Below, one piece after another: positions 18,509 through 54,418 of a DNA stretch of 64,000 nt. The translations under genes and the position numbers were made by a program. Under the pieces are notes generated by a model that searched no databases, was not told where the DNA came from, and saw only the letters and a list, made by a program, of their open reading frames with translations. The stretch is from sequence record NC_041878.1. One strand, given 5' to 3'. Position 1 is the first letter of the stretch; every line of letters begins with the position of its first letter.

Positions 18509-18976
18509 TTAGAAATGATATGGCAGACTGTTTTCAAATGGTCTGCCATTTTTTATTGATTCCCAAAGAGAATTAAAGTCAGTTACAATGTTTGTATTGT
18601 ATAATGTACTTTTAGCTCCAGGGTGAAGGGGTTTAGGCCAGTTTCCTATTTTAACCCAAGAATATCCAGCACTTTCATCATTAAGTTCCGGTATAAACTC
18701 ATCCGGTACTACCACAATAAAAGAATAATATCTGAATTTCTCGTTCTTAGTACAGAAAACATCAAAAGGAATTATATCTTCTATTGGGGGAACAGAATCC
18801 CCCAATTCTTCAGCTATTTCTCTATATAGAGCTTCAATAGCAGTTTCATCATTTTCAATCTTACCACCAACGAAGCCCCAATTGTTTGAGTACGTAACTG
18901 TTTCAGAACGTAAGTTTAGCATCATACGTCCAGTACGCTTTGATAAAAATATAGCTCCTACTGCTTCGTTTGTCAT
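18509..18976 (-). CDS. Nudix hydrolase
   Basis: Complete Nudix box GGKIENDETAIEALYREIAEELG. Confidence 0.92.
   Translation of the reverse strand: MTNEAVGAIFLSKRTGRMMLNLRSETVTYSNNWGFVGGKIENDETAIEALYREIAEELGDSVPPIEDIIPFDVFCTKNEKFRYYSFIVVVPDEFIPELNDESAGYSWVKIGNWPKPLHPGAKSTLYNTNIVTDFNSLWESIKNGRPFENSLPYHF
18520..18554 (+). terminator. terminator for the 16272-18505 operon (overlaps the Nudix gene 3' end)
   Basis: ATGGCAGAC...GTCTGCCAT followed by tttttt. Confidence 0.7.
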
Positions 18977-18985
18977 AATATTTCC

Positions 18986-20323
18986 TTAAATGCTTTTAAA
19001 GGCAATTCTCCAATAACCTTGTCTGTATTTGTTCATCACTGATTGATGCCAACCCACGACTTCGTTATATTTGTAAAAATGTGAATCATTTGAATTATAT
19101 ACATAATTTTCTACTGTATTAGGGTCTATAATAGTAGCACCATTATTTTCGATTTTGAATAAATCGTTGGGTTTAATATTAGTACCTTTATACTCTAAAT
19201 TATGTTCAGCAATGTTTATAAACATTTGCTCAGGTAATACGTTTTCTAATTGTGAATTTTCATACACAAATGATTTTATAGGATAGTCTACTGTGTAACC
19301 TGACGTATCTACTTGAACTGTCATTTTGTTAGGAATTTCAGTCGTTGCTCGTTTAATTACATCACCACGGATTGGATTAACTTCTTCAATACCTTGTTGG
19401 AACTTAATATATAATTCTTTCTCATCAAAATCAGGATCTAGATATTTCAAATACCTATCCCATGAATATACATTTCCGTTAGCTGATAGAGGATTCAAAC
19501 TTGAACTAACCAATGTTAGTTCATATATTTCAGAATTGATACTATTATCTACTCTATCAACCAATATGCACATATTCTTAGGAGTATAAACATCCGTAAC
19601 GCTATCAATATAATTTCCCAAATCGATTTCCAATTCATCCTTTGCAGTATTGATATTGGTAACAATTTGTTGTATTAGTTTTGCTTGTTTAACGTTGGCT
19701 GGTAGGCTTAACCACATTGGACATTCAAATGTTAGTACCATAATATCCAAATCAGTATCAGTTCCTTGAGGAAATCCTCTAGTACTGAACTGGCAATCAG
19801 TTAATTCTATATCAACAACACCTGTCCAATCAAGAGGATTCTCTGACAACTGTAAGGTAACTGATGGATTGAACAATGTTGCAATTTGTTCAAACAATTC
19901 CATTTTGTTTGTTAATGTAGTTGTCCAAATATTGACGTTAAATGTTAGTTTCCACGGAGTCGGATTGTATCGAGTTATCTGATATTGTTTATCAAGTTCA
20001 TCTACATATTCATTTTCACGTGGACTAACATTTGTTCCCATCACGGTAGTATATGCTGCTGGAGCACGAAGATTCGATCTATCAAATTTCAATGATTGCA
20101 CGTTAATTGTAATAATAGGAGCAGTTGGTAAAATATTTTCAGAGCCACCATTAATATAATATGCTGCCATTCTGGAAATATCTGCATAGCGAGCTGGAAC
20201 AACTTTATATTTTTGGTTCCCAGCGTCATCTACTCCATTTTTTACTTGAAATTCTCCAAAGACTCTGATAAGATGTTTCAACAGACGGCGAAATTGACCG
20301 TCATAATAATAATTTATTTTCAT
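18986..20323 (-). CDS. gp15: tail terminator / sheath stabiliser, T4 gp15-like
   Basis: N-terminal YYYDGQFRR...F..F.V...VP.RY and P.P..L.F motifs matching gp15. Confidence 0.7.
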   Translation of the reverse strand: MKINYYYDGQFRRLLKHLIRVFGEFQVKNGVDDAGNQKYKVVPARYADISRMAAYYINGGSENILPTAPIITINVQSLKFDRSNLRAPAAYTTVMGTNVSPRENEYVDELDKQYQITRYNPTPWKLTFNVNIWTTTLTNKMELFEQIATLFNPSVTLQLSENPLDWTGVVDIELTDCQFSTRGFPQGTDTDLDIMVLTFECPMWLSLPANVKQAKLIQQIVTNINTAKDELEIDLGNYIDSVTDVYTPKNMCILVDRVDNSINSEIYELTLVSSSLNPLSANGNVYSWDRYLKYLDPDFDEKELYIKFQQGIEEVNPIRGDVIKRATTEIPNKMTVQVDTSGYTVDYPIKSFVYENSQLENVLPEQMFINIAEHNLEYKGTNIKPNDLFKIENNGATIIDPNTVENYVYNSNDSHFYKYNEVVGWHQSVMNKYRQGYWRIAFKSI

Positions 20324-21816
20324 TTGTTATCCTTTTTTCTATAAACGATATTTGGTTTAACAACGTCTTGAATAGAAACCCTATCAGGACTATTGATGAA
20401 ATTGGTTTGCTCAATGTTTGCACCTGTCCACGGTAAACGACCACCATAGTTGAACTGTGACCATGAAGAATTTTCCGCACTATATTGCCATAATGTTACT
20501 GGCACATAATCAGTACGATAAAAGTAACTTCCATCTTCTGGATCACTTGGGAACATAGAACCACTGTTTTCATCTGTTTGTGTAGGTGGAATTGCAGAAC
20601 GAATATCATCATGTGCAGTTCTGTTCGCCGCAATATCTTTTGTGGTAAATGGAACATCACTATGTGAATCTGGTGGAATTACCCATGTTACGCCATCATC
20701 TTCTACTTGATAAAGTTGAGGTTTTTGATAGTAACAGTAGAAATCTTCTGCATCATCAGGAACAATGTTTTCATCTGTGTAAGGTAGTATACAATTTAAC
20801 CATTTTTTATCACTTAAATAGTATTGATACAATGAATATCCAGAAACACTTGCAGGATCTTCTAAGAAGAAGAATGAGAAATCTTCAGCTTTTCTTGGAA
20901 GTTTATTACCATATTGTGTTTCAACAATAGTCCAGTTATCATTAGTATCTTTCTCATAAAGTACTGGTAAAGTAAGTTTTATGAAAAACATATTTTTGGA
21001 TGGATTTGCAGGGAATTCATAACCACTAATAACATAACGTGCCAATTCATTAATATCTGAAAGGTCATCATAAATGTGTTCGTTAGTCCAATGAATATAA
21101 GGTACTTCTGAATCTGCTTGTTGAATGATTCTGTTCATAATATCCAGTTCAGTTTGACCAGTACTGATGCCACCACCTGAACCATTACCGTTTCCGTTAT
21201 TTGGGTCATTTGGGTTATCAGGGAAAGTATTGTTGTCAGGATCTGTAATATCTGAAAACTCTGGTGAATCTGTTAATGGTTTAACACGCAATTTAAAAAT
21301 GTGATGTTGCCATGTTGCAGAATAACCTTCAGATGTTCTGAAAGCATCTTGAACAACATAAAATCTGTTTACACCAACGTCTCGACCTAGCACGTCGAAA
21401 TCGCGTAGGTTTGGTAATTCAATTACGTCACCGGGCATGATTTTTCTTCCCACACGCTGCATCATTGTGTTATAATGAACCGTTATGTCCATCGTATCAA
21501 AATTAAAAAATAAACCTGGAATTTTTAGGTCAGGAGTTGCTTCTTGCACTTGATAAACAGCAGGAAGTGTGATAGCTTGAACGTTGTAGGAACGTTGTGT
21601 AACTTCTCCGAATACGTAGTCACTTAAACTTGACAACGTAGCTGAACCATCAGTATAATCAGGTAAAGTTTGGTCAGTACTTCCAGCATTGCCTTTTGGT
21701 CCTTGATATGTATACAACCACATATCAACACCACCAATGTTATATTGTTCAGCAATGGCTTTATCAATGAAGTTGTAGTCGTTAGTACGACCTTTTTTCC
21801 ACATTCTATAAGACAT
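20320..21816 (-). CDS. gp14: neck/head-completion protein, T4 gp14-like, with a C-terminal extension
   Basis: GGVDMWLY and PGDVIELP motifs. Start moved to MSYRMW (21816), after a ggag RBS; late promoter at 21848-21855. Confidence 0.6.
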   Translation of the reverse strand: MSYRMWKKGRTNDYNFIDKAIAEQYNIGGVDMWLYTYQGPKGNAGSTDQTLPDYTDGSATLSSLSDYVFGEVTQRSYNVQAITLPAVYQVQEATPDLKIPGLFFNFDTMDITVHYNTMMQRVGRKIMPGDVIELPNLRDFDVLGRDVGVNRFYVVQDAFRTSEGYSATWQHHIFKLRVKPLTDSPEFSDITDPDNNTFPDNPNDPNNGNGNGSGGGISTGQTELDIMNRIIQQADSEVPYIHWTNEHIYDDLSDINELARYVISGYEFPANPSKNMFFIKLTLPVLYEKDTNDNWTIVETQYGNKLPRKAEDFSFFFLEDPASVSGYSLYQYYLSDKKWLNCILPYTDENIVPDDAEDFYCYYQKPQLYQVEDDGVTWVIPPDSHSDVPFTTKDIAANRTAHDDIRSAIPPTQTDENSGSMFPSDPEDGSYFYRTDYVPVTLWQYSAENSSWSQFNYGGRLPWTGANIEQTNFINSPDRVSIQDVVKPNIVYRKKDNK

Positions 21817-21857
21817 ATTCTTAATCTCCAAAAAGAAATTTATACCGTATTTATTTT

Positions 21858-50344: not shown

Positions 50345-50387
50345 ATGTACCCCAAAAAGTTTCCATATTGTATTTAATAAAATATCT

Positions 50388-50416
50388 TGGAACGATGAAA
50401 AATTTTGTGGTATAAT
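50388..50416 (+). promoter_or_regulatory. early/middle-type promoter TGGAACGA-N10-TGTGGTATAAT with no downstream gene
   Basis: Perfect consensus copy facing a ~700-nt region with no credible ORF. Confidence 0.8.
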
Positions 50417-50419
50417 ATG

Positions 50420-51100
50420 TTAGTAAAACCCTGCTTGGCGGTACGAAAGTACTGACAAAATAAACCTGATCCTATCGAAAATGTAGATGGCAGATGAGAA
50501 GTTCAAGCAGTTCGCAGTGCAGAAGACACCCGTTAGGAGATGGCATAGTTTGTACCACCCACGGCAATACGGCACTATAAAGAAGTACACTAGACTTGAT
50601 AGTACTTCCTCGATAGATATATAGGTTCGCACCCTACCAATAAGTTAAGGGAGTTTATCTGGATGATAAATTTGCGATGGATTTTTGTACAATATTGATC
50701 CGTCTAAATTTCCAGATGAATAGGTACTGAGTTTGATTGTATAGACTTAGTGCTGAGTGTGGTTAGCCCACGACCGTTACTATATGAACTGCGATAGAGA
50801 GAAACAGAGTAACCCGCTTTCATTCTACCTTGTAGAAATTCGCAATACAATGAATCGACGACTATCATCGTCAGATATAAATCAGTACTTTAAATAGTAC
50901 TTTTTTTACGCCTTCATTCCCCTGCGGGGGGATGATAGAATCTCTACAAATCTCGTCAGTAATAAATGTGTTAAACGTACAGAATGATATGAATTGAGTT
51001 GTCTCAGTACAAACGTAGTGCAGTACAGAACAACGAAAATTCTTTGACATTCGAAGAATGGCAAATCTCAATCTTATAAAGAGTACAGAAATTCAGACAC
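50420..51100 (+). ncRNA. candidate large structured non-coding RNA (or origin-priming transcript)
   Basis: Dedicated promoter; no RBS-led ORF; many stems with G-U pairs, a GAAA and a cUGCGg tetraloop; possible 3' ends near 50907 or 51127. Confidence 0.55.
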
Positions 51101-51127
51101 AAAAAAACCAGCACTAAGGCTGGTTCT
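51101..51127 (-). terminator. terminator (long T-tract on the minus strand, possibly bidirectional)
   Basis: Minus strand reads AACCAGC-cttagt-GCTGGTTTTTTT, starting a few nt after the TAA at 51131. Confidence 0.8.
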
Positions 51128-51130
51128 TTA

Positions 51131-51349
51131 TTATCTTTTATTTTCCTTTTTGACCTTTTTATTGTATTGCTTCACCAACAGGTCACGGTCAGTCACAGGC
51201 ATATTGAGTAGCATTTCATAGCTAGTATTCTCAATATATACAGAAACCTCCATTAAACCATTTTTTATATCTTCACAGTTCATACGAAGGTCTGCGATTT
51301 CCTGCATAATTTCTTCTGGTTCAGAAATTAGAAGCTTTGTTCGAAAAAA
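51131..51349 (-). CDS. hidden -1-frame ORF downstream of the gp26-like gene (G/GT 'T' or gp51-like domain)
   Basis: The -1 frame is open from the UUUUUUC slippery site to TAA 51131. It encodes RTKLLISEPEEI then MQEIADLRMNCEDIKNGLMEVSVYIENTSYEMLLNMPVTDRDLLVKQYNKKVKKENKR (58 aa from ATG 51307, below the track cutoff). Confidence 0.75.
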   Translation of the reverse strand, partial: FFRTKLLISEPEEIMQEIADLRMNCEDIKNGLMEVSVYIENTSYEMLLNMPVTDRDLLVKQYNKKVKKENKR

Positions 51350-52185
51350 TTGCTAGGATCGAATTGTAGATTCTCGATAGTCCATTCATGACCACAACTA
51401 GAACATCCAACATCCATAGTATGACTGACACCAATATTATTGATTAAGTCAGATTTTTCACGGATTTGTTTTAGAATAAATGCTGGTTGTGCACCTAACC
51501 ATTCTGCAATAAATTCACGTTCAGTGATTTTATCCCCTTCCACAGTTTCAATACTGTCAATATTTGCAACAATCATATCAAAACTTAGCTTAGTCATTTC
51601 TTCAAAAATTTGACTGAACATTTCCATTTTTTCTTCATCACTCATCTCTTCTAGATCTTCTAGCATACGAGCTTTCTTTTGTTGCTGGAACATTTTTTGT
51701 CCAAATACTGAATATTCTTCCCATGTATGAGGTTTGAATTTTAGTAGCAATCCACCAACATCTTCTAGTAGAAGTTCAGGTTGTTCTTCTAGTAATTCTG
51801 CACTATCAAGTAGGAATTGTAGGTCACGCTCAAATGCACCGTGATGACCACATTCAGGACAATCTACTTCAATGTGATATTCTCTTTCTTTGGTTGCTAA
51901 TTTGATACCGATTAGAAGCAACTCAACATCAGGTACAAATAGTTTACGAGCATCACCAATGTTAGGAACACAATTCTCAATAACATTCGCTACTGCTTCA
52001 CCATTCATTAATGCATCTGGATTGTTAAACATTAATTCATCTCTTGCTGAACGAGCACAAATACCACATTCAACTGTATCATTTACTAAAACACCAGCAG
52101 GATATTTGATAACATCATTACTTACTAGTTTAGTATAAAGTACTTCAACCTTTGTGTACTTTGATAAAGGGTTCATCTTATTCAT
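51328..52185 (-). CDS. gp26: baseplate hub / tail assembly chaperone, T4 gp26-like
   Basis: CPECG and CSSCG motifs; D.E.LL..IK.AT pattern; TATAAATA at 52238-52231. Confidence 0.7.
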   Translation of the reverse strand: MNKMNPLSKYTKVEVLYTKLVSNDVIKYPAGVLVNDTVECGICARSARDELMFNNPDALMNGEAVANVIENCVPNIGDARKLFVPDVELLLIGIKLATKEREYHIEVDCPECGHHGAFERDLQFLLDSAELLEEQPELLLEDVGGLLLKFKPHTWEEYSVFGQKMFQQQKKARMLEDLEEMSDEEKMEMFSQIFEEMTKLSFDMIVANIDSIETVEGDKITEREFIAEWLGAQPAFILKQIREKSDLINNIGVSHTMDVGCSSCGHEWTIENLQFDPSNFFEQSF

Positions 52186-52249
52186 ATCGACTCCATAATA
52201 AATACGACTATACTATAAATTTGTATTAGTTATTTATAAGGAAAATCAC

Positions 52250-54418
52250 ATGGCAGGAATAGGCTCTGATATTATTCAACAGCAATTGTTGGATCAAAGT
52301 ATTGCTATGAATGATAATTTAAGTGCGATGCGTACAGTACTTCTTGATATTGAAAAGAATACCAAGAATGGAAGTGGATCAGGTGGTTCTGGCGGCAATG
52401 GTGGTAGTGGAAACCCTGGAAACCGAAATGATCGTAGAGGCGGCGGTGGAAGTGGTGGAAACCCATTCAAAGATGCATTTAAAGATTTATTCGGTGAAGC
52501 AAAAAATATGGGTAGAACCATATTAGGAAATAACGGTTCCATTCAAAATACAGTTGGGGCATTCACTACTTCAGCTAGAGTACTACAAAACTCATTAGGT
52601 AAACTACCTGGGCCAATCGGCTTAGCAGCTAATGCATTTCTTTCAATCGTTCAGGTTGGTGGACAAGTCTACGAGTACTTGAATGAACAATTAAACATGT
52701 ATAACCAGTTAAACAGTGCTGGTCTTACTCTTGCTGATGGTATGTTGACAGTACGTAAAGGTTCTGGTGCTGCATTCATGAGTATAAATGAATTTGGTGC
52801 TGCATTAACAAAGAACAGTGATGCACTAGCAGCAATGGAAGGTCAATATGGTGATGGTGTTGAACACTTCGGTAAATTGCTAAATAGTGTCCAGCTTGTA
52901 CAAGAACAAATGGGATTGTACGGTGTTAGTGTTCAACAACTAGCAGACTTAACAGCTAAGAACTACAAGTATCAAAAAATGTATTCTAGCCAAGCTACAT
53001 TGAATTCAATTAACGAACAAGCTAGTACTACTAAGTTTGTTGGTCAAATGACATATTTGAGTAAGGCTGTTGGTAAGAGTGTTGATGAATTACTTGCTCG
53101 TTTTTCTGATTTAAGTACTAACATTGATTCTGGTGCAATTATATCTGGTTTACAAAACCGTGCTGGTCAAACTGAAAAACAAGCACTTGATGTAAACAAA
53201 TCATGGACAGCAATGTATGCGTCTTTAGGTGAATTTGGTAAGACTGCACAAAGAATTAACGCTTCAAAATGGGGTCTAGGTTCATTACCAGATGAATTTA
53301 CTGATGTTGTTTCACAACAATATGCAGATTTTATGGAACAGGTTCAACGGGCAGGTATTACTGACCAACGAACTATTAACCAATTAAACGCTAAATTCAT
53401 TAAAGACCATGAAGACCAAATTAAGAAACAAGCAGATATTGACCGTGCAGTAGGTAACACGGCGGCAGAAACATTCCACCGTCAAATGCTACAAGCGGCG
53501 AACACCTTAAACGACCCAAAAAATAATCCTAACCCAGCAATTGAAGCATTCACTAATAGATTTAATTTATGGATTGGTAAAACATTTACTGAACCATTCA
53601 ATGCATTCTATACAAGAACTGCTGAAAATGCAGTTAAATATCTAAGTGATTTGGCTGATAGAAGTACTGACTCATGGGATTTCATGGCTAATTTAGCAAA
53701 AGATGCCTTTACGAAATTTGATGCAGGTATGCTTGGGCCGTTTGGTGAATTAATAAAACTTCCTGGTAAGTTAATGGAAGGAATATTTGGTGATACGTGG
53801 ACTAAATTATCTAGTGCATTTGATAATTTGGCTGGAGATATAGTACAGATTCCGATTCGTATAGGTAAATTAATTTGGGAAATGTTTACTGGTTCAGAAG
53901 AAGAAGTTGATGCTGCTGGTAAGCAATTAATGGGTTCAATTAAGAGAATATTCTCGGATGTAGTGGGTGTTTTCACAAGGATTGGTGAATTAAGTATAAA
54001 TTTCGATGATGTTAAGAAAGGATTTACTGAGGCTATTGAGTCCTTAAAAAATAAATTCACTAAATTGTGGAGTCGTATTAAAAACTGGTGGTCAGATTCA
54101 GAAGAACCTGAAGAAAAAACTACACCAACTGCTTCAACTACAACACCACCTGTTTCACCAACTGCTTCACAGCCTAAAACTGCTGGAGTACAGAAAGTTA
54201 CTGCACAACCTGAATTCACTAAACCAGTGAAAATAGAACAAGCGGAGCAAACTGCACCGCAAGAAACACAGACCGCTCAAAATAATACGAATGATTCTGT
54301 AAATAAGCTACTTTCGGGAATACTAAATAACTTAGAATCTCAAGTACAGAATAATAACCAATTGGCTATTATCTTACGTCAGATTGCTGAGAATACAGAA
54401 CCACCTCGAAATGTATAA
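52250..54418 (+). CDS. putative tape-measure / gp29-like helical tail protein, 722 aa
   Basis: A/G/L/Q-rich helical composition, aromatic-spaced repeats in the C-terminal half, low-complexity termini; late promoter at 52197-52204. Confidence 0.5.
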   Translation: MAGIGSDIIQQQLLDQSIAMNDNLSAMRTVLLDIEKNTKNGSGSGGSGGNGGSGNPGNRNDRRGGGGSGGNPFKDAFKDLFGEAKNMGRTILGNNGSIQNTVGAFTTSARVLQNSLGKLPGPIGLAANAFLSIVQVGGQVYEYLNEQLNMYNQLNSAGLTLADGMLTVRKGSGAAFMSINEFGAALTKNSDALAAMEGQYGDGVEHFGKLLNSVQLVQEQMGLYGVSVQQLADLTAKNYKYQKMYSSQATLNSINEQASTTKFVGQMTYLSKAVGKSVDELLARFSDLSTNIDSGAIISGLQNRAGQTEKQALDVNKSWTAMYASLGEFGKTAQRINASKWGLGSLPDEFTDVVSQQYADFMEQVQRAGITDQRTINQLNAKFIKDHEDQIKKQADIDRAVGNTAAETFHRQMLQAANTLNDPKNNPNPAIEAFTNRFNLWIGKTFTEPFNAFYTRTAENAVKYLSDLADRSTDSWDFMANLAKDAFTKFDAGMLGPFGELIKLPGKLMEGIFGDTWTKLSSAFDNLAGDIVQIPIRIGKLIWEMFTGSEEEVDAAGKQLMGSIKRIFSDVVGVFTRIGELSINFDDVKKGFTEAIESLKNKFTKLWSRIKNWWSDSEEPEEKTTPTASTTTPPVSPTASQPKTAGVQKVTAQPEFTKPVKIEQAEQTAPQETQTAQNNTNDSVNKLLSGILNNLESQVQNNNQLAIILRQIAENTEPPRNV

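What the first reader, a model, noticed from the sequence alone, without database searches (positions are those of the whole stretch)
51131..51360. Probable programmed -1 ribosomal frameshift giving a lambda G/GT-like chaperone pair
On the minus strand the gp26-like gene ends GAT CCT AGC AAT TTT TTC GAA CAA AGC TTC TAA. It contains a correctly phased X XXY YYZ slippery heptamer, T TTT TTC (51349-51343). The -1 frame has a TAG just upstream (51355-51353) and then stays open for 70 codons to TAA at 51131. A U-rich terminator follows immediately, so the hidden ORF is inside the transcript. Its internal ATG (51307) has no convincing RBS. Slippage would give ...NFF-RTKLLISEPEEIMQEI...TSYEMLLNMPVTDRDLL...KR (~351 aa vs 285 aa). 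The S.E.L.NMP..DR segment resembles the tail-chaperone 'T' / gp51-like motif. A weak stem (TAATTTCT/AGAAATTA) starts ~12 nt downstream. The gene lies head-to-head with the tape-measure candidate. G/GT frameshifts are established for lambda-, P2- and Mu-type tails; I am not aware of one described for a T4-related jumbo phage gp26/gp51 pair.
Basis: partly seen in the sequence, partly recalled or inferred. Interest (0 to 1): 0.8.

Follow-up and report, generated by a model that had tools for sequence, protein, structure and literature searches.

The report
Conserved −1 frameshift in gp26-like gene
The baseplate-hub chaperone gene of jumbo phage CBB very probably makes a short and a longer protein by a programmed −1 ribosomal frameshift, a device kept in every T4-related lineage sampled except T4 itself, which makes the two forms from two separate genes (26 and 51).

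Summary
On the minus strand, the 285-aa T4 gp26-like gene (51328-52185) carries an in-phase T TTT TTC (51349-51343). A −1 stop lies just upstream, and 70 open −1 codons follow, ending at a terminator.

The window is Pectobacterium phage vB_PcaM_CBB. The −1 ORF is annotated there as a separate 58-aa gene.

- **Jumbo relatives:** all 82 loci (37 non-redundant lineages, gp26 identity down to about 25%) keep an in-phase slippery heptamer and a 70-79-codon −1 ORF. The −1 peptide is conserved from the slip site onward, while the first ATG falls anywhere between codon −12 and +50.
- **Smaller T4-like phages:** 93 of 93 loci keep the arrangement. Five different canonical heptamers replace one another.
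- **T4 gp51:** in the smaller phages the −1 peptide is the C-terminal domain of T4 gp51. For the jumbo clade, including CBB, this is probable but weaker.
- **T4 itself:** its gp26 has no slippery site. Genes 26 and 51 are separate paralogues.

So this works like lambda G/GT, but the protein belongs to the PF12322 family, not the G/GT family. No protein-level evidence exists, and I found no published description.

The parts
51328..52185 (-). 0-frame gene (CBB gp250, 285 aa): T4 gp26-like baseplate hub assembly protein. This is the short product.
   Evidence: PF12322 8e-23 and phrog_150 7.5e-30. AlphaFold model pLDDT 88.5. Two conserved Cys pairs and an invariant Phe-Phe at residues 280-281.
51343..51349 (-). 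Slippery heptamer T TTT TTC, in X XXY YYZ phase with the gp26-like frame.
   Evidence: An in-phase slippery heptamer is present in 37/37 jumbo lineages and in 93/93 small-genome loci.
51353..51355 (-). TAG in the −1 frame, one codon upstream of the heptamer. It closes the −1 frame, so that frame opens essentially at the slip site.
   Evidence: In 16 of 37 lineages at most one −1 codon is open upstream of the heptamer.
51131..51352 (-). Open −1 frame including its TAA (73 codons in all, 70 after the slip). It encodes a helical extension domain of about 70 residues.
   Evidence: Alignment A2 of 28 −1 peptides starts at the slip-site Phe-Phe and has no gap before column 11. Model pLDDT 84, four helices. 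Profile similarity to the gp51 C-terminus.
51131..51307 (-). The part of the −1 ORF annotated in RefSeq as a separate 58-aa gene (gp249, hypothetical protein).
   Evidence: phrog_18291 5.6e-38, matching residues 16-73 only.
51307..51330 (-). Weak AU-rich hairpin (8 bp) starting 12 nt after the heptamer. Probably not a stimulator in CBB.
   Evidence: centroid −5.9 kcal/mol, z −0.19. (percentile 0.17).
51098..51125 (-). Terminator-like hairpin with T-run directly after the −1 stop. It places both reading frames on one transcript.
   Evidence: Direct reading. The stem was found by the scan.
52186..52249 (.). 64-bp divergent intergenic region between the gp26-like gene and the 722-aa gene.
   Evidence: One weak promoter-like match on the + strand.
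52250..54418 (+). Divergent neighbour gp251 (722 aa), an abundant virion protein and candidate tape measure.
   Evidence: phrog_14121. 29 peptides in CBB virions. Called tape measure in some relatives. Not detectably related to T4 gp29. Length scales with tail length in CBB and PA5oct.

Best explanation
Ribosomes translating the gp26-like gene usually read on for four codons and stop, giving the 285-aa protein. A fraction slip back one base on U UUU UUC, with both tRNA-Phe re-pairing on UUU UUU. These ribosomes continue for 70 codons in the −1 frame and give a protein of about 351 aa with the same first 281 residues plus a helical C-terminal domain.

The two nested products correspond to T4 gp26 (PF12322 domain alone) and T4 gp51 (PF12322 domain plus C-terminal domain), the two baseplate-hub assembly factors of T4. 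The frameshift would fix the ratio of an abundant short form to a scarce long form.

Shown here: the site, the open frame, their conservation, the −1 coding signature, and the homology of the domains. Inferred: that slippage occurs, how efficient it is, and the chaperone role.
For: 1. **Conservation in jumbo phages.** Twenty-two GenBank jumbo phages and 60 IMG/VR loci were evaluated: 82 loci, 37 lineages with under 80% identity. All have an in-phase slippery heptamer 1-11 codons before the stop (32 TTTTTTC, 4 TTTTTTT, 1 AAATTTT) followed by 70-79 open −1 codons.
2. **Selection at the nucleotide level.** The codon before the heptamer encodes 9 different residues. Its wobble base is T in 36/36 T-type heptamers, against a background of 0.74. 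The first Phe codon is TTT in 36/36 T-type heptamers (the A AAT TTT lineage has Asn there), against a background of 0.735.
3. **No conserved start.** The first ATG of the −1 ORF lies anywhere from codon −12 to +50, and one lineage has none. The −1 peptides nevertheless align from the slip-site Phe-Phe (28/28), with no gap before column 11. The next residue is Arg in 20/28, and Leu follows in 26/28 and 21/28 a few positions on. The 0-frame tail varies from 1 to 11 codons.
4. **Coding signature.** Variability by codon position after the site follows the −1 frame (1.38, 1.21, 1.71 bits).
5. **Smaller T4-related phages.** All 93 evaluable loci keep the arrangement, and five different canonical heptamers replace one another (TTTTTTC 69, GGGTTTA 11, AAATTTT 10, GGGTTTT 2, AAAGGGT 1). 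The same holds in S-WAM1, OLIVR5 and LPCS28.
6. **Link to gp51.** Those −1 peptides match phrog_634 'baseplate hub assembly catalyst' from residue 1-3 (4e-31, 3e-8, 6e-11). The last 55 aa of T4 gp51 match the same region. A gp51 C-terminal HMM hits 13/13 of them. The jumbo profile against gp51 C-termini gives hhalign P 2.6e-5 to 9e-5, and no column shuffle of 200-300 reaches the observed score.
7. **T4 as a natural control.** T4 gp26 keeps Phe-Phe but with non-slippery codons (G TTC TTT), and gene 25 follows it. gp26 and gp51 are paralogues.
8. **Downstream RNA structure.** In 19 of 37 lineages the window after the site is among the 10% most stable of its own gene, and the hairpin most often starts 7-8 nt after the heptamer.
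9. **Uniqueness in the window.** It is the only in-phase heptamer followed by a long −1 ORF.
Against: - There is no protein, ribosome-profiling or transcript evidence for any member.
- CBB virion mass spectrometry lists neither gp250 nor gp249. That fits a non-structural chaperone but proves nothing.
- CBB's own downstream structure is weak, and no family-wide consensus structure was predicted.
- In several relatives an ATG overlaps the gp26 stop, so a free-standing small protein made by coupled re-initiation could coexist with the frameshift.
- The link between CBB's extension and gp51 rests on profile-profile similarity only. There is no direct PHROG or Pfam hit.
- No in-frame fusion was found in the jumbo clade.
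Confidence: 0.88

Rival explanations
1. There is no frameshift. The −1 ORF is an independent small gene, as annotated, started at its own ATG/GTG/TTG or by termination-reinitiation at the gp26 stop.
For: It is annotated this way in all 25 GenBank records examined, apart from three where it is not annotated at all. ATG overlaps the stop in XbC2, Kaldavass, both Yersinia phages, PBECO4 and Turkey5. Gene callers produce 40-67-aa proteins from it.
Against: The start position is not conserved (codon −12 to +50, with none in one lineage). In RaK2 and Vibrio phage 2.275.O the first ATG lies 69-90 nt past the gp26 stop, inside the conserved peptide. Conservation begins exactly at the heptamer. This model does not explain the wobble-base constraint on the upstream codon or the interchange of five different slippery heptamers. 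CBB has no GGAG-type Shine-Dalgarno sequence before ATG 51307.
Confidence: 0.06
2. The shift is made on the RNA, not on the ribosome. RNA polymerase stutters on the T-run and inserts one U in a fraction of transcripts.
For: Most sites are runs of six or seven T. Transcriptional slippage on homopolymers is an established way of reaching a −1 frame (my own knowledge).
Against: Twenty-four of the 93 small-genome loci and one jumbo lineage use heptamers that are not homopolymers (G GGT TTA, A AAT TTT, G GGT TTT, A AAG GGT) yet are perfect tandem-slippage sites. The strict X XXY YYZ phase is not required for polymerase stuttering. Six T is short for efficient stuttering (my own knowledge).
Confidence: 0.03
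3. The heptamer is only a by-product of a conserved Phe-Phe in the protein, and the long −1 ORF is not translated from it.
For: Phe-Phe is invariant in the jumbo gp26-like proteins, and T4 gp26 has it too without any extension.
Against: T4 encodes the same Phe-Phe with non-slippery codons. Lineages that lost Phe-Phe in the 0 frame keep another slippery heptamer (L044; GGGTTTA and AAAGGGT types). The −1 ORF length, its sequence and its homology to the gp51 C-terminal domain are conserved.
Confidence: 0.02

Closest known systems
Lambda gpG/gpGT and the conserved tail-assembly-chaperone frameshift of long-tailed phages (Xu, Hendrix and Duda 2004; also P2 E/E+E' and Mu)
   Same: A −1 slip on a heptamer near the 3' end of a tail-assembly gene gives a short product and a C-terminally extended product with the same N-terminus. 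The gene lies next to the putative tape-measure gene. Neither product is in the CBB virion protein list.
   Different: The protein family is unrelated (PF12322) and has no fold match to any solved structure. The gene is transcribed divergently from the tape-measure candidate and is not between the tube and tape-measure genes. The role in T4 is assigned to hub assembly, not tube polymerisation. The short-to-long ratio is unknown.
T4 gp26 and gp51, listed as 'hub assembly chaperones' in PMC3004832
   Same: The CBB short product has the PF12322 domain of both T4 proteins. The extension aligns with the C-terminal domain that distinguishes gp51 from gp26, starting at the Phe equivalent to gp51 Phe-200. 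As in T4, the gene lies head-to-head with the hub and tape-measure side of the cluster.
   Different: T4 uses two diverged paralogous genes and has no slippery site in gene 26. CBB and most other sampled lineages show one PF12322 gene plus a frameshift. CBB's extension is about 15 residues longer than the gp51 domain and only distantly similar to it.
T4 gene 26 / 26' (internal in-frame start annotated in NC_000866)
   Same: One hub-chaperone gene yields two nested products.
   Different: In T4 the products share the C-terminus and differ at the N-terminus, through internal initiation. Here they share the N-terminus and differ at the C-terminus, through frameshifting.
E. coli dnaX tau/gamma −1 frameshift
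   Same: Tandem slippage on an X XXY YYZ heptamer. Many relatives have a hairpin starting 6-8 nt downstream.
   Different: In dnaX the shifted product is the shorter one. No upstream Shine-Dalgarno-like stimulator is evident here. CBB itself lacks a convincing hairpin.

Membership tests
Programmed −1 ribosomal frameshift site (tandem slippage) | X XXY YYZ heptamer in phase with the upstream frame | tested here: met
   T TTT TTC at 51349-51343.
Programmed −1 ribosomal frameshift site (tandem slippage) | Overlapping −1 ORF open from the site, with no need for its own start | tested here: met
   70 open codons after the site, with a TAG one codon upstream. Unique among the 80 in-phase heptamers of the window.
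Programmed −1 ribosomal frameshift site (tandem slippage) | Site and frame relation conserved in diverged relatives, with slipperiness kept when the sequence changes | tested here: met
   37/37 jumbo lineages and 93/93 small-genome loci. Six different canonical heptamers in all.
Programmed −1 ribosomal frameshift site (tandem slippage) | Downstream stimulatory RNA structure at a 5-9 nt spacing | tested here: inconclusive
   CBB: weak (z −0.19, percentile 0.17). Family: 19/37 lineages in the top 10% of their own gene. No common consensus structure and no Rfam match.
Programmed −1 ribosomal frameshift site (tandem slippage) | Trans-frame protein observed | not testable with these tools
   No proteomic or ribosome-profiling data were available. 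The virion list of CBB lacks both ORFs.
Lambda G/GT-type tail assembly chaperone | Sequence or fold membership in the tail-assembly-chaperone families | tested here: not met
   The only significant Pfam match is PF12322. No PDB sequence hit. No Foldseek hit below E = 1 for either piece.
Lambda G/GT-type tail assembly chaperone | Gene pair located between the tail-tube gene and the tape-measure gene, on the same strand | tested here: not met
   The gene is divergent from the 722-aa candidate. Endonuclease VII and gp46-like genes lie on the other side.
Lambda G/GT-type tail assembly chaperone | Short and long nested products from a 3'-proximal frameshift | tested here: met
   Inferred from sequence: about 285 aa and about 351 aa.
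Lambda G/GT-type tail assembly chaperone | Products needed for tail assembly but absent from virions, and binding to the tape measure and tube protein | not testable with these tools
   Absence from the CBB virion list is consistent with this but weak.
T4 gp26/gp51 family (PF12322, baseplate hub assembly chaperone/catalyst) | PF12322 domain above the curated cut-off | tested here: met
   81.7 bits against a cut-off of 24.5. T4 gp26 and gp51 both match the same model.
T4 gp26/gp51 family (PF12322, baseplate hub assembly chaperone/catalyst) | gp51-type C-terminal domain directly after the PF12322 domain | tested here: inconclusive
   CBB and the jumbo clade: hhalign P 2.6e-5 to 9e-5, collinear, 0/200-300 shuffles, but no direct HMM hit. 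Small-genome relatives: clearly met.
T4 gp26/gp51 family (PF12322, baseplate hub assembly chaperone/catalyst) | Only one PF12322 gene in the genome, so that the frameshift replaces gene 51 | tested here: inconclusive
   One PF12322 ORF in the window and none in CBB 1-50000, together about 114 of 356 kb. tblastn finds one place per genome in 91 records, but it would miss a paralogue as diverged as gp51 is from gp26.

The most novel reading that the evidence does not exclude
Making a short and a long hub-assembly protein from one PF12322 gene by −1 frameshifting is the general, probably ancestral, arrangement of T4-related phages. It is seen here in cyanophage-like contigs, Pootjesviridae, a Nanhuvirus of the Straboviridae, and the Rak2/PA5oct/Atu_ph07 jumbo clade. 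T4's separate genes 26 and 51 would then be a derived duplication in which the long form became fixed in one frame. On this reading gp26 and gp51 are the T4 counterpart of the G/GT chaperone pair, which T4 seemed to lack. The 'catalytic' low-dose requirement for gp51 would be what the low-efficiency frameshift provides elsewhere.
Probability: 0.55. Interest if true: 0.85.

Novelty: new variant of a known kind. Interest (0 to 1): 0.78.

Why it matters
Programmed frameshifting in tail-assembly chaperone genes is one of the most conserved features of long-tailed phages. To my knowledge, T4 and its relatives have been treated as lacking it.

If this site is real:
- The principle extends to the T4 superfamily through an unrelated protein family.
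- It gives a concrete, testable model for two T4 proteins, gp26 and gp51, whose roles in hub assembly are still poorly understood.
- It corrects the annotation of these phage genomes. None of the 25 GenBank records examined marks a slippage. The extension is called a separate hypothetical gene, or 'gp51' in one record, or is not called at all.
- The interchange of six different slippery heptamers at one homologous position makes a clean natural data set for studying what makes a heptamer slippery in bacteria.

Tried and rejected
- **Consensus RNA fold (RNAalifold)** of 26 downstream regions: no pairs predicted. Structure is lineage-specific.
- **Rfam** on 50900-51600: only sub-threshold hits on the terminator.
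- **Sequence searches for the pieces:** Pfam, NCBIfam and PDB sequence searches found nothing for the extension. For the gp26-like piece they found only PF12322 and a sub-threshold zinc-ribbon match.
- **Foldseek against PDB** for both models: nothing below E = 1.
- **Profile search of the extension** against 1.84 billion representative proteins: only 41-67-aa stand-alone calls and no in-frame fusion. The two long hits look like low-complexity noise.
- **Extension against T4 gp28:** nothing.
- **Extension against single-sequence T4 gp51:** not significant. The signal appeared only with family profiles.
- **gp251 against T4 gp29:** no similarity, and they fall in different PHROGs.
- **Fetching the whole CBB genome** to exclude a second PF12322 gene: stopped after the first 50 kb because of cost.

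No trans-frame sequence was built, searched or folded. The two frames were always handled apart.

Full report
**Identity of the window.** Window 50900-52300 is 100% identical to Pectobacterium phage vB_PcaM_CBB (NC_041878/KU574722, record 174900-176300), a 378-kb 'Rak2-like' jumbo myovirus. The gene in question is gp250. It is 285 aa, annotated 'structural protein', and matches Pfam PF12322 'T4_baseplate' at 8e-23 and phrog_150 'baseplate hub'. RefSeq annotates the last 58 codons of the −1 ORF as a separate hypothetical gene, gp249. That piece matches phrog_18291, a family of unknown function, over residues 16-73 only, that is, from the Met onward.

**The observation.**
- an in-phase T TTT TTC at 51349-51343;
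- a −1 TAG at 51355-51353;
- 70 open −1 codons down to TAA at 51131;
- a hairpin plus T-run directly after it.

Among 80 in-phase X XXY YYZ heptamers in the 40 long ORFs of the window, the −1 frame stays open for a median of 4 codons. This is the only one with 50 or more.

**Conservation in jumbo relatives.** I read the homologous locus in 21 other GenBank jumbo phages. These cover Mimas-, Eneladus-, Asterius- and Alcyoneusvirus, 7t3/Kae01, XaC1, Vibrio 2.275.O, PA5oct, Atu_ph07, Phosso, SCTP-2 and Xoo-sp13. I also read 68 IMG/VR loci found with a gp26 alignment.
- Of 82 evaluable loci (37 lineages below 80% identity in the −1 peptide), every one has an in-phase slippery heptamer 1-11 codons before the gp26 stop. 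The types are 32 TTTTTTC, 4 TTTTTTT and 1 AAATTTT. Each is followed by 70-79 open −1 codons. gp26 identity to CBB falls to 22-30% in the distant members.
- The codon preceding the heptamer encodes nine different residues. Its third base is T in 36/36 T-type sites, and A in the A-type site.
- The first Phe codon is TTT in 36/36 T-type sites; the A-type lineage has Asn there. Background frequencies in the same genes are 0.74 and 0.735.
- The seventh base is C in 32/37, against codon bias, because the next −1 codon encodes Arg (20 of 28 aligned peptides).

**Translation starts at the slip site, not at a downstream start codon.**
- The first ATG of the −1 ORF lies anywhere between codon −12 and +50 relative to the heptamer, and one lineage has none.
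- In RaK2 and Vibrio phage 2.275.O it lies 69 and 90 nt beyond the gp26 stop, inside the conserved peptide.
- The 28 aligned −1 peptides begin at the slip-site Phe-Phe (28/28), with no gap before column 11.
- The 0-frame tail after the site varies from 1 to 11 codons.
- Nucleotide variability after the site is highest at the third position of the −1 frame, which is the second position of the 0 frame.
- The +1 frame closes quickly and shows no conservation.

**T4 as a control, and the link to gp51.** The CBB paper gives the T4 accession, and I fetched the T4 hub cluster.
- T4 gp26 (208 aa) keeps the Phe-Phe, but with codons that are not slippery. It is followed by gene 25.
- T4 gp26 and gp51 are paralogues. 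Both match PF12322 (8.8e-64 and 3.9e-52) and phrog_150, and BLASTP between them gives 2e-6.
- gp51 has an extra C-terminal domain of about 48 residues after the PF12322 domain.
- The jumbo-phage −1 profile aligns with the C-terminus of the gp51 family (P 7e-4 against full-length gp51). Against the C-terminal piece the score is 25.3, while 300 column shuffles reach at most 22.1. The N-terminal halves alone are only marginal, with 10/200 shuffles reaching the observed score.

**Beyond jumbo phages.** A tblastn search with T4 gp26 led to three phages: Synechococcus phage S-WAM1 (Kyanoviridae), Agrobacterium phage OLIVR5 (Pootjesviridae) and Cronobacter phage LPCS28 (Straboviridae, Nanhuvirus).
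- All three have an in-phase T TTT TTC one or two codons before the stop and 57-65 open −1 codons after it.
- Their −1 peptides match phrog_634 'baseplate hub assembly catalyst' at 4e-31, 3e-8 and 6e-11. The matches start at residue 1-3 and cover the same profile region as the last 55 residues of T4 gp51.
- In OLIVR5 the small ORF is actually annotated with the gp51 name.
- Two further IMG/VR scans gave 93 evaluable loci, and all 93 have an in-phase slippery heptamer followed by at least 40 open −1 codons. Five heptamer types occur: TTTTTTC 69, GGGTTTA 11, AAATTTT 10, GGGTTTT 2 and AAAGGGT 1.
- A gp51 C-terminal HMM built only from T4-type proteins hits 13/13 non-redundant −1 peptides.
- With these peptides added to the gp51 profile, the jumbo profile scores P 2.6e-5, and no shuffle of 200 reaches it.

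The interchange of different canonical heptamers at one homologous position argues for tandem tRNA slippage. It argues against polymerase stuttering and against mere conservation of Phe-Phe.

**RNA structure.**
- No family-wide consensus fold was predicted, and no Rfam family matches.
- Taken singly, many lineages have a hairpin whose 5' arm most often starts 7-8 nt after the heptamer. The z-score is −2 or lower (down to −5.4) in 8 of 20 folded sequences.
- In 19 of 37 lineages the window after the site is among the 10% most stable of its own gene.
- CBB and its closest relatives are weak in this respect.

**What the proteins are.**
- The AlphaFold model of the short product is confident (pLDDT 88.5, pTM 0.85). 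Confidence drops right after the Phe-Phe. The model has no structural neighbour in the PDB.
- The extension alone is predicted as four helices (pLDDT 84), also without a neighbour.
- Membership in the lambda G/GT family is therefore not supported. The likeness is one of mechanism and logic.
- The T4 tail review lists gp26 and gp51 as hub assembly chaperones, and says gp51 is required for assembly but absent from the particle.
- CBB virion mass spectrometry lists neither gp250 nor gp249, but finds 29 peptides of the divergent neighbour gp251.
- gp251 (722 aa) is called tape measure in some relatives. Its length scales with tail length: CBB has 722 aa and 123 nm, PA5oct has 798 aa and 136 nm. 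It shows no similarity to T4 gp29. Its identity as a tape measure is an inference.

**Novelty.**
- None of the 25 GenBank records marks a slippage.
- Full-text searches found no paper that mentions a frameshift for these phages or for gp26/gp51.
- The searchable library omits most subscription journals, so an earlier description cannot be excluded.

**Limits.**
- There is no expression evidence.
- Efficiency is unknown.
- The equivalence of CBB's extension to the gp51 domain is probable, not proven.
- The absence of a second PF12322 gene was checked in only about 114 of 356 kb of CBB.
- Conservation is given as counts, and only descriptive follow-up is proposed.

Noticed in passing
L007:1586-2461, L008:1586-2461; P0009, P0054, P0061: The gp26-like protein is misnamed 'Lead, cadmium, zinc and mercury transporting ATPase' in the two Yersinia phage records and 'ribosomal protein S27E' in JGI records. 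The cause is presumably its Cys-x-x-Cys pairs.
   Followed up: no
L012 (RaK2), L018 (PA5oct), L010 (fENko-Kae01): The −1 ORF is not annotated at all in these records, although it is open and conserved (76, 78 and 72 codons).
   Followed up: yes
window 50345-51097: About 750 bp after the terminator hold no annotated gene in CBB. The same spot is variable in relatives: three small ORFs in Kaldavass, an adenine methyltransferase in Yersinia fHe-Yen9-04, two opposite-strand genes in XaC1, and a P-loop NTPase in Vibrio phage 2.275.O. It looks like an insertion hot spot.
   Followed up: no
L092:35657-36371 (CBB gp077, HD-domain protein): The jumbo gp26 HMM gives a weak hit (17 bits, E 2.5e-5 among 210 ORFs) to the helical middle part of this HD-domain protein. 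It lacks the Cys pairs and is probably compositional.
   Followed up: partly
L091:7803-8090 (T4 gene 26'): RefSeq annotates an internal in-frame start in T4 gene 26, giving a 95-aa C-terminal product. T4 therefore also makes nested products from this gene, by a different route.
   Followed up: no
window 20320-21831 (−) and 18509-18976 (−): In-phase A AAA AAG and A AAA AAT heptamers lie within the last 15 codons of two other genes. The −1 frame closes after 1 and 4 codons, so a slip would only alter the extreme C-terminus.
   Followed up: no
window 52250-54418 (gp251) and L018:1-1925: The length of the divergent neighbour tracks tail length (722 aa and 123 nm in CBB; 798 aa and 136 nm in PA5oct), as expected of a tape measure. 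PHROGs files it under 'head and packaging'.
   Followed up: partly
window 51098-51125: The terminator stem is palindromic and has T-rich tails on both strands. It may therefore stop transcription from either direction.
   Followed up: no
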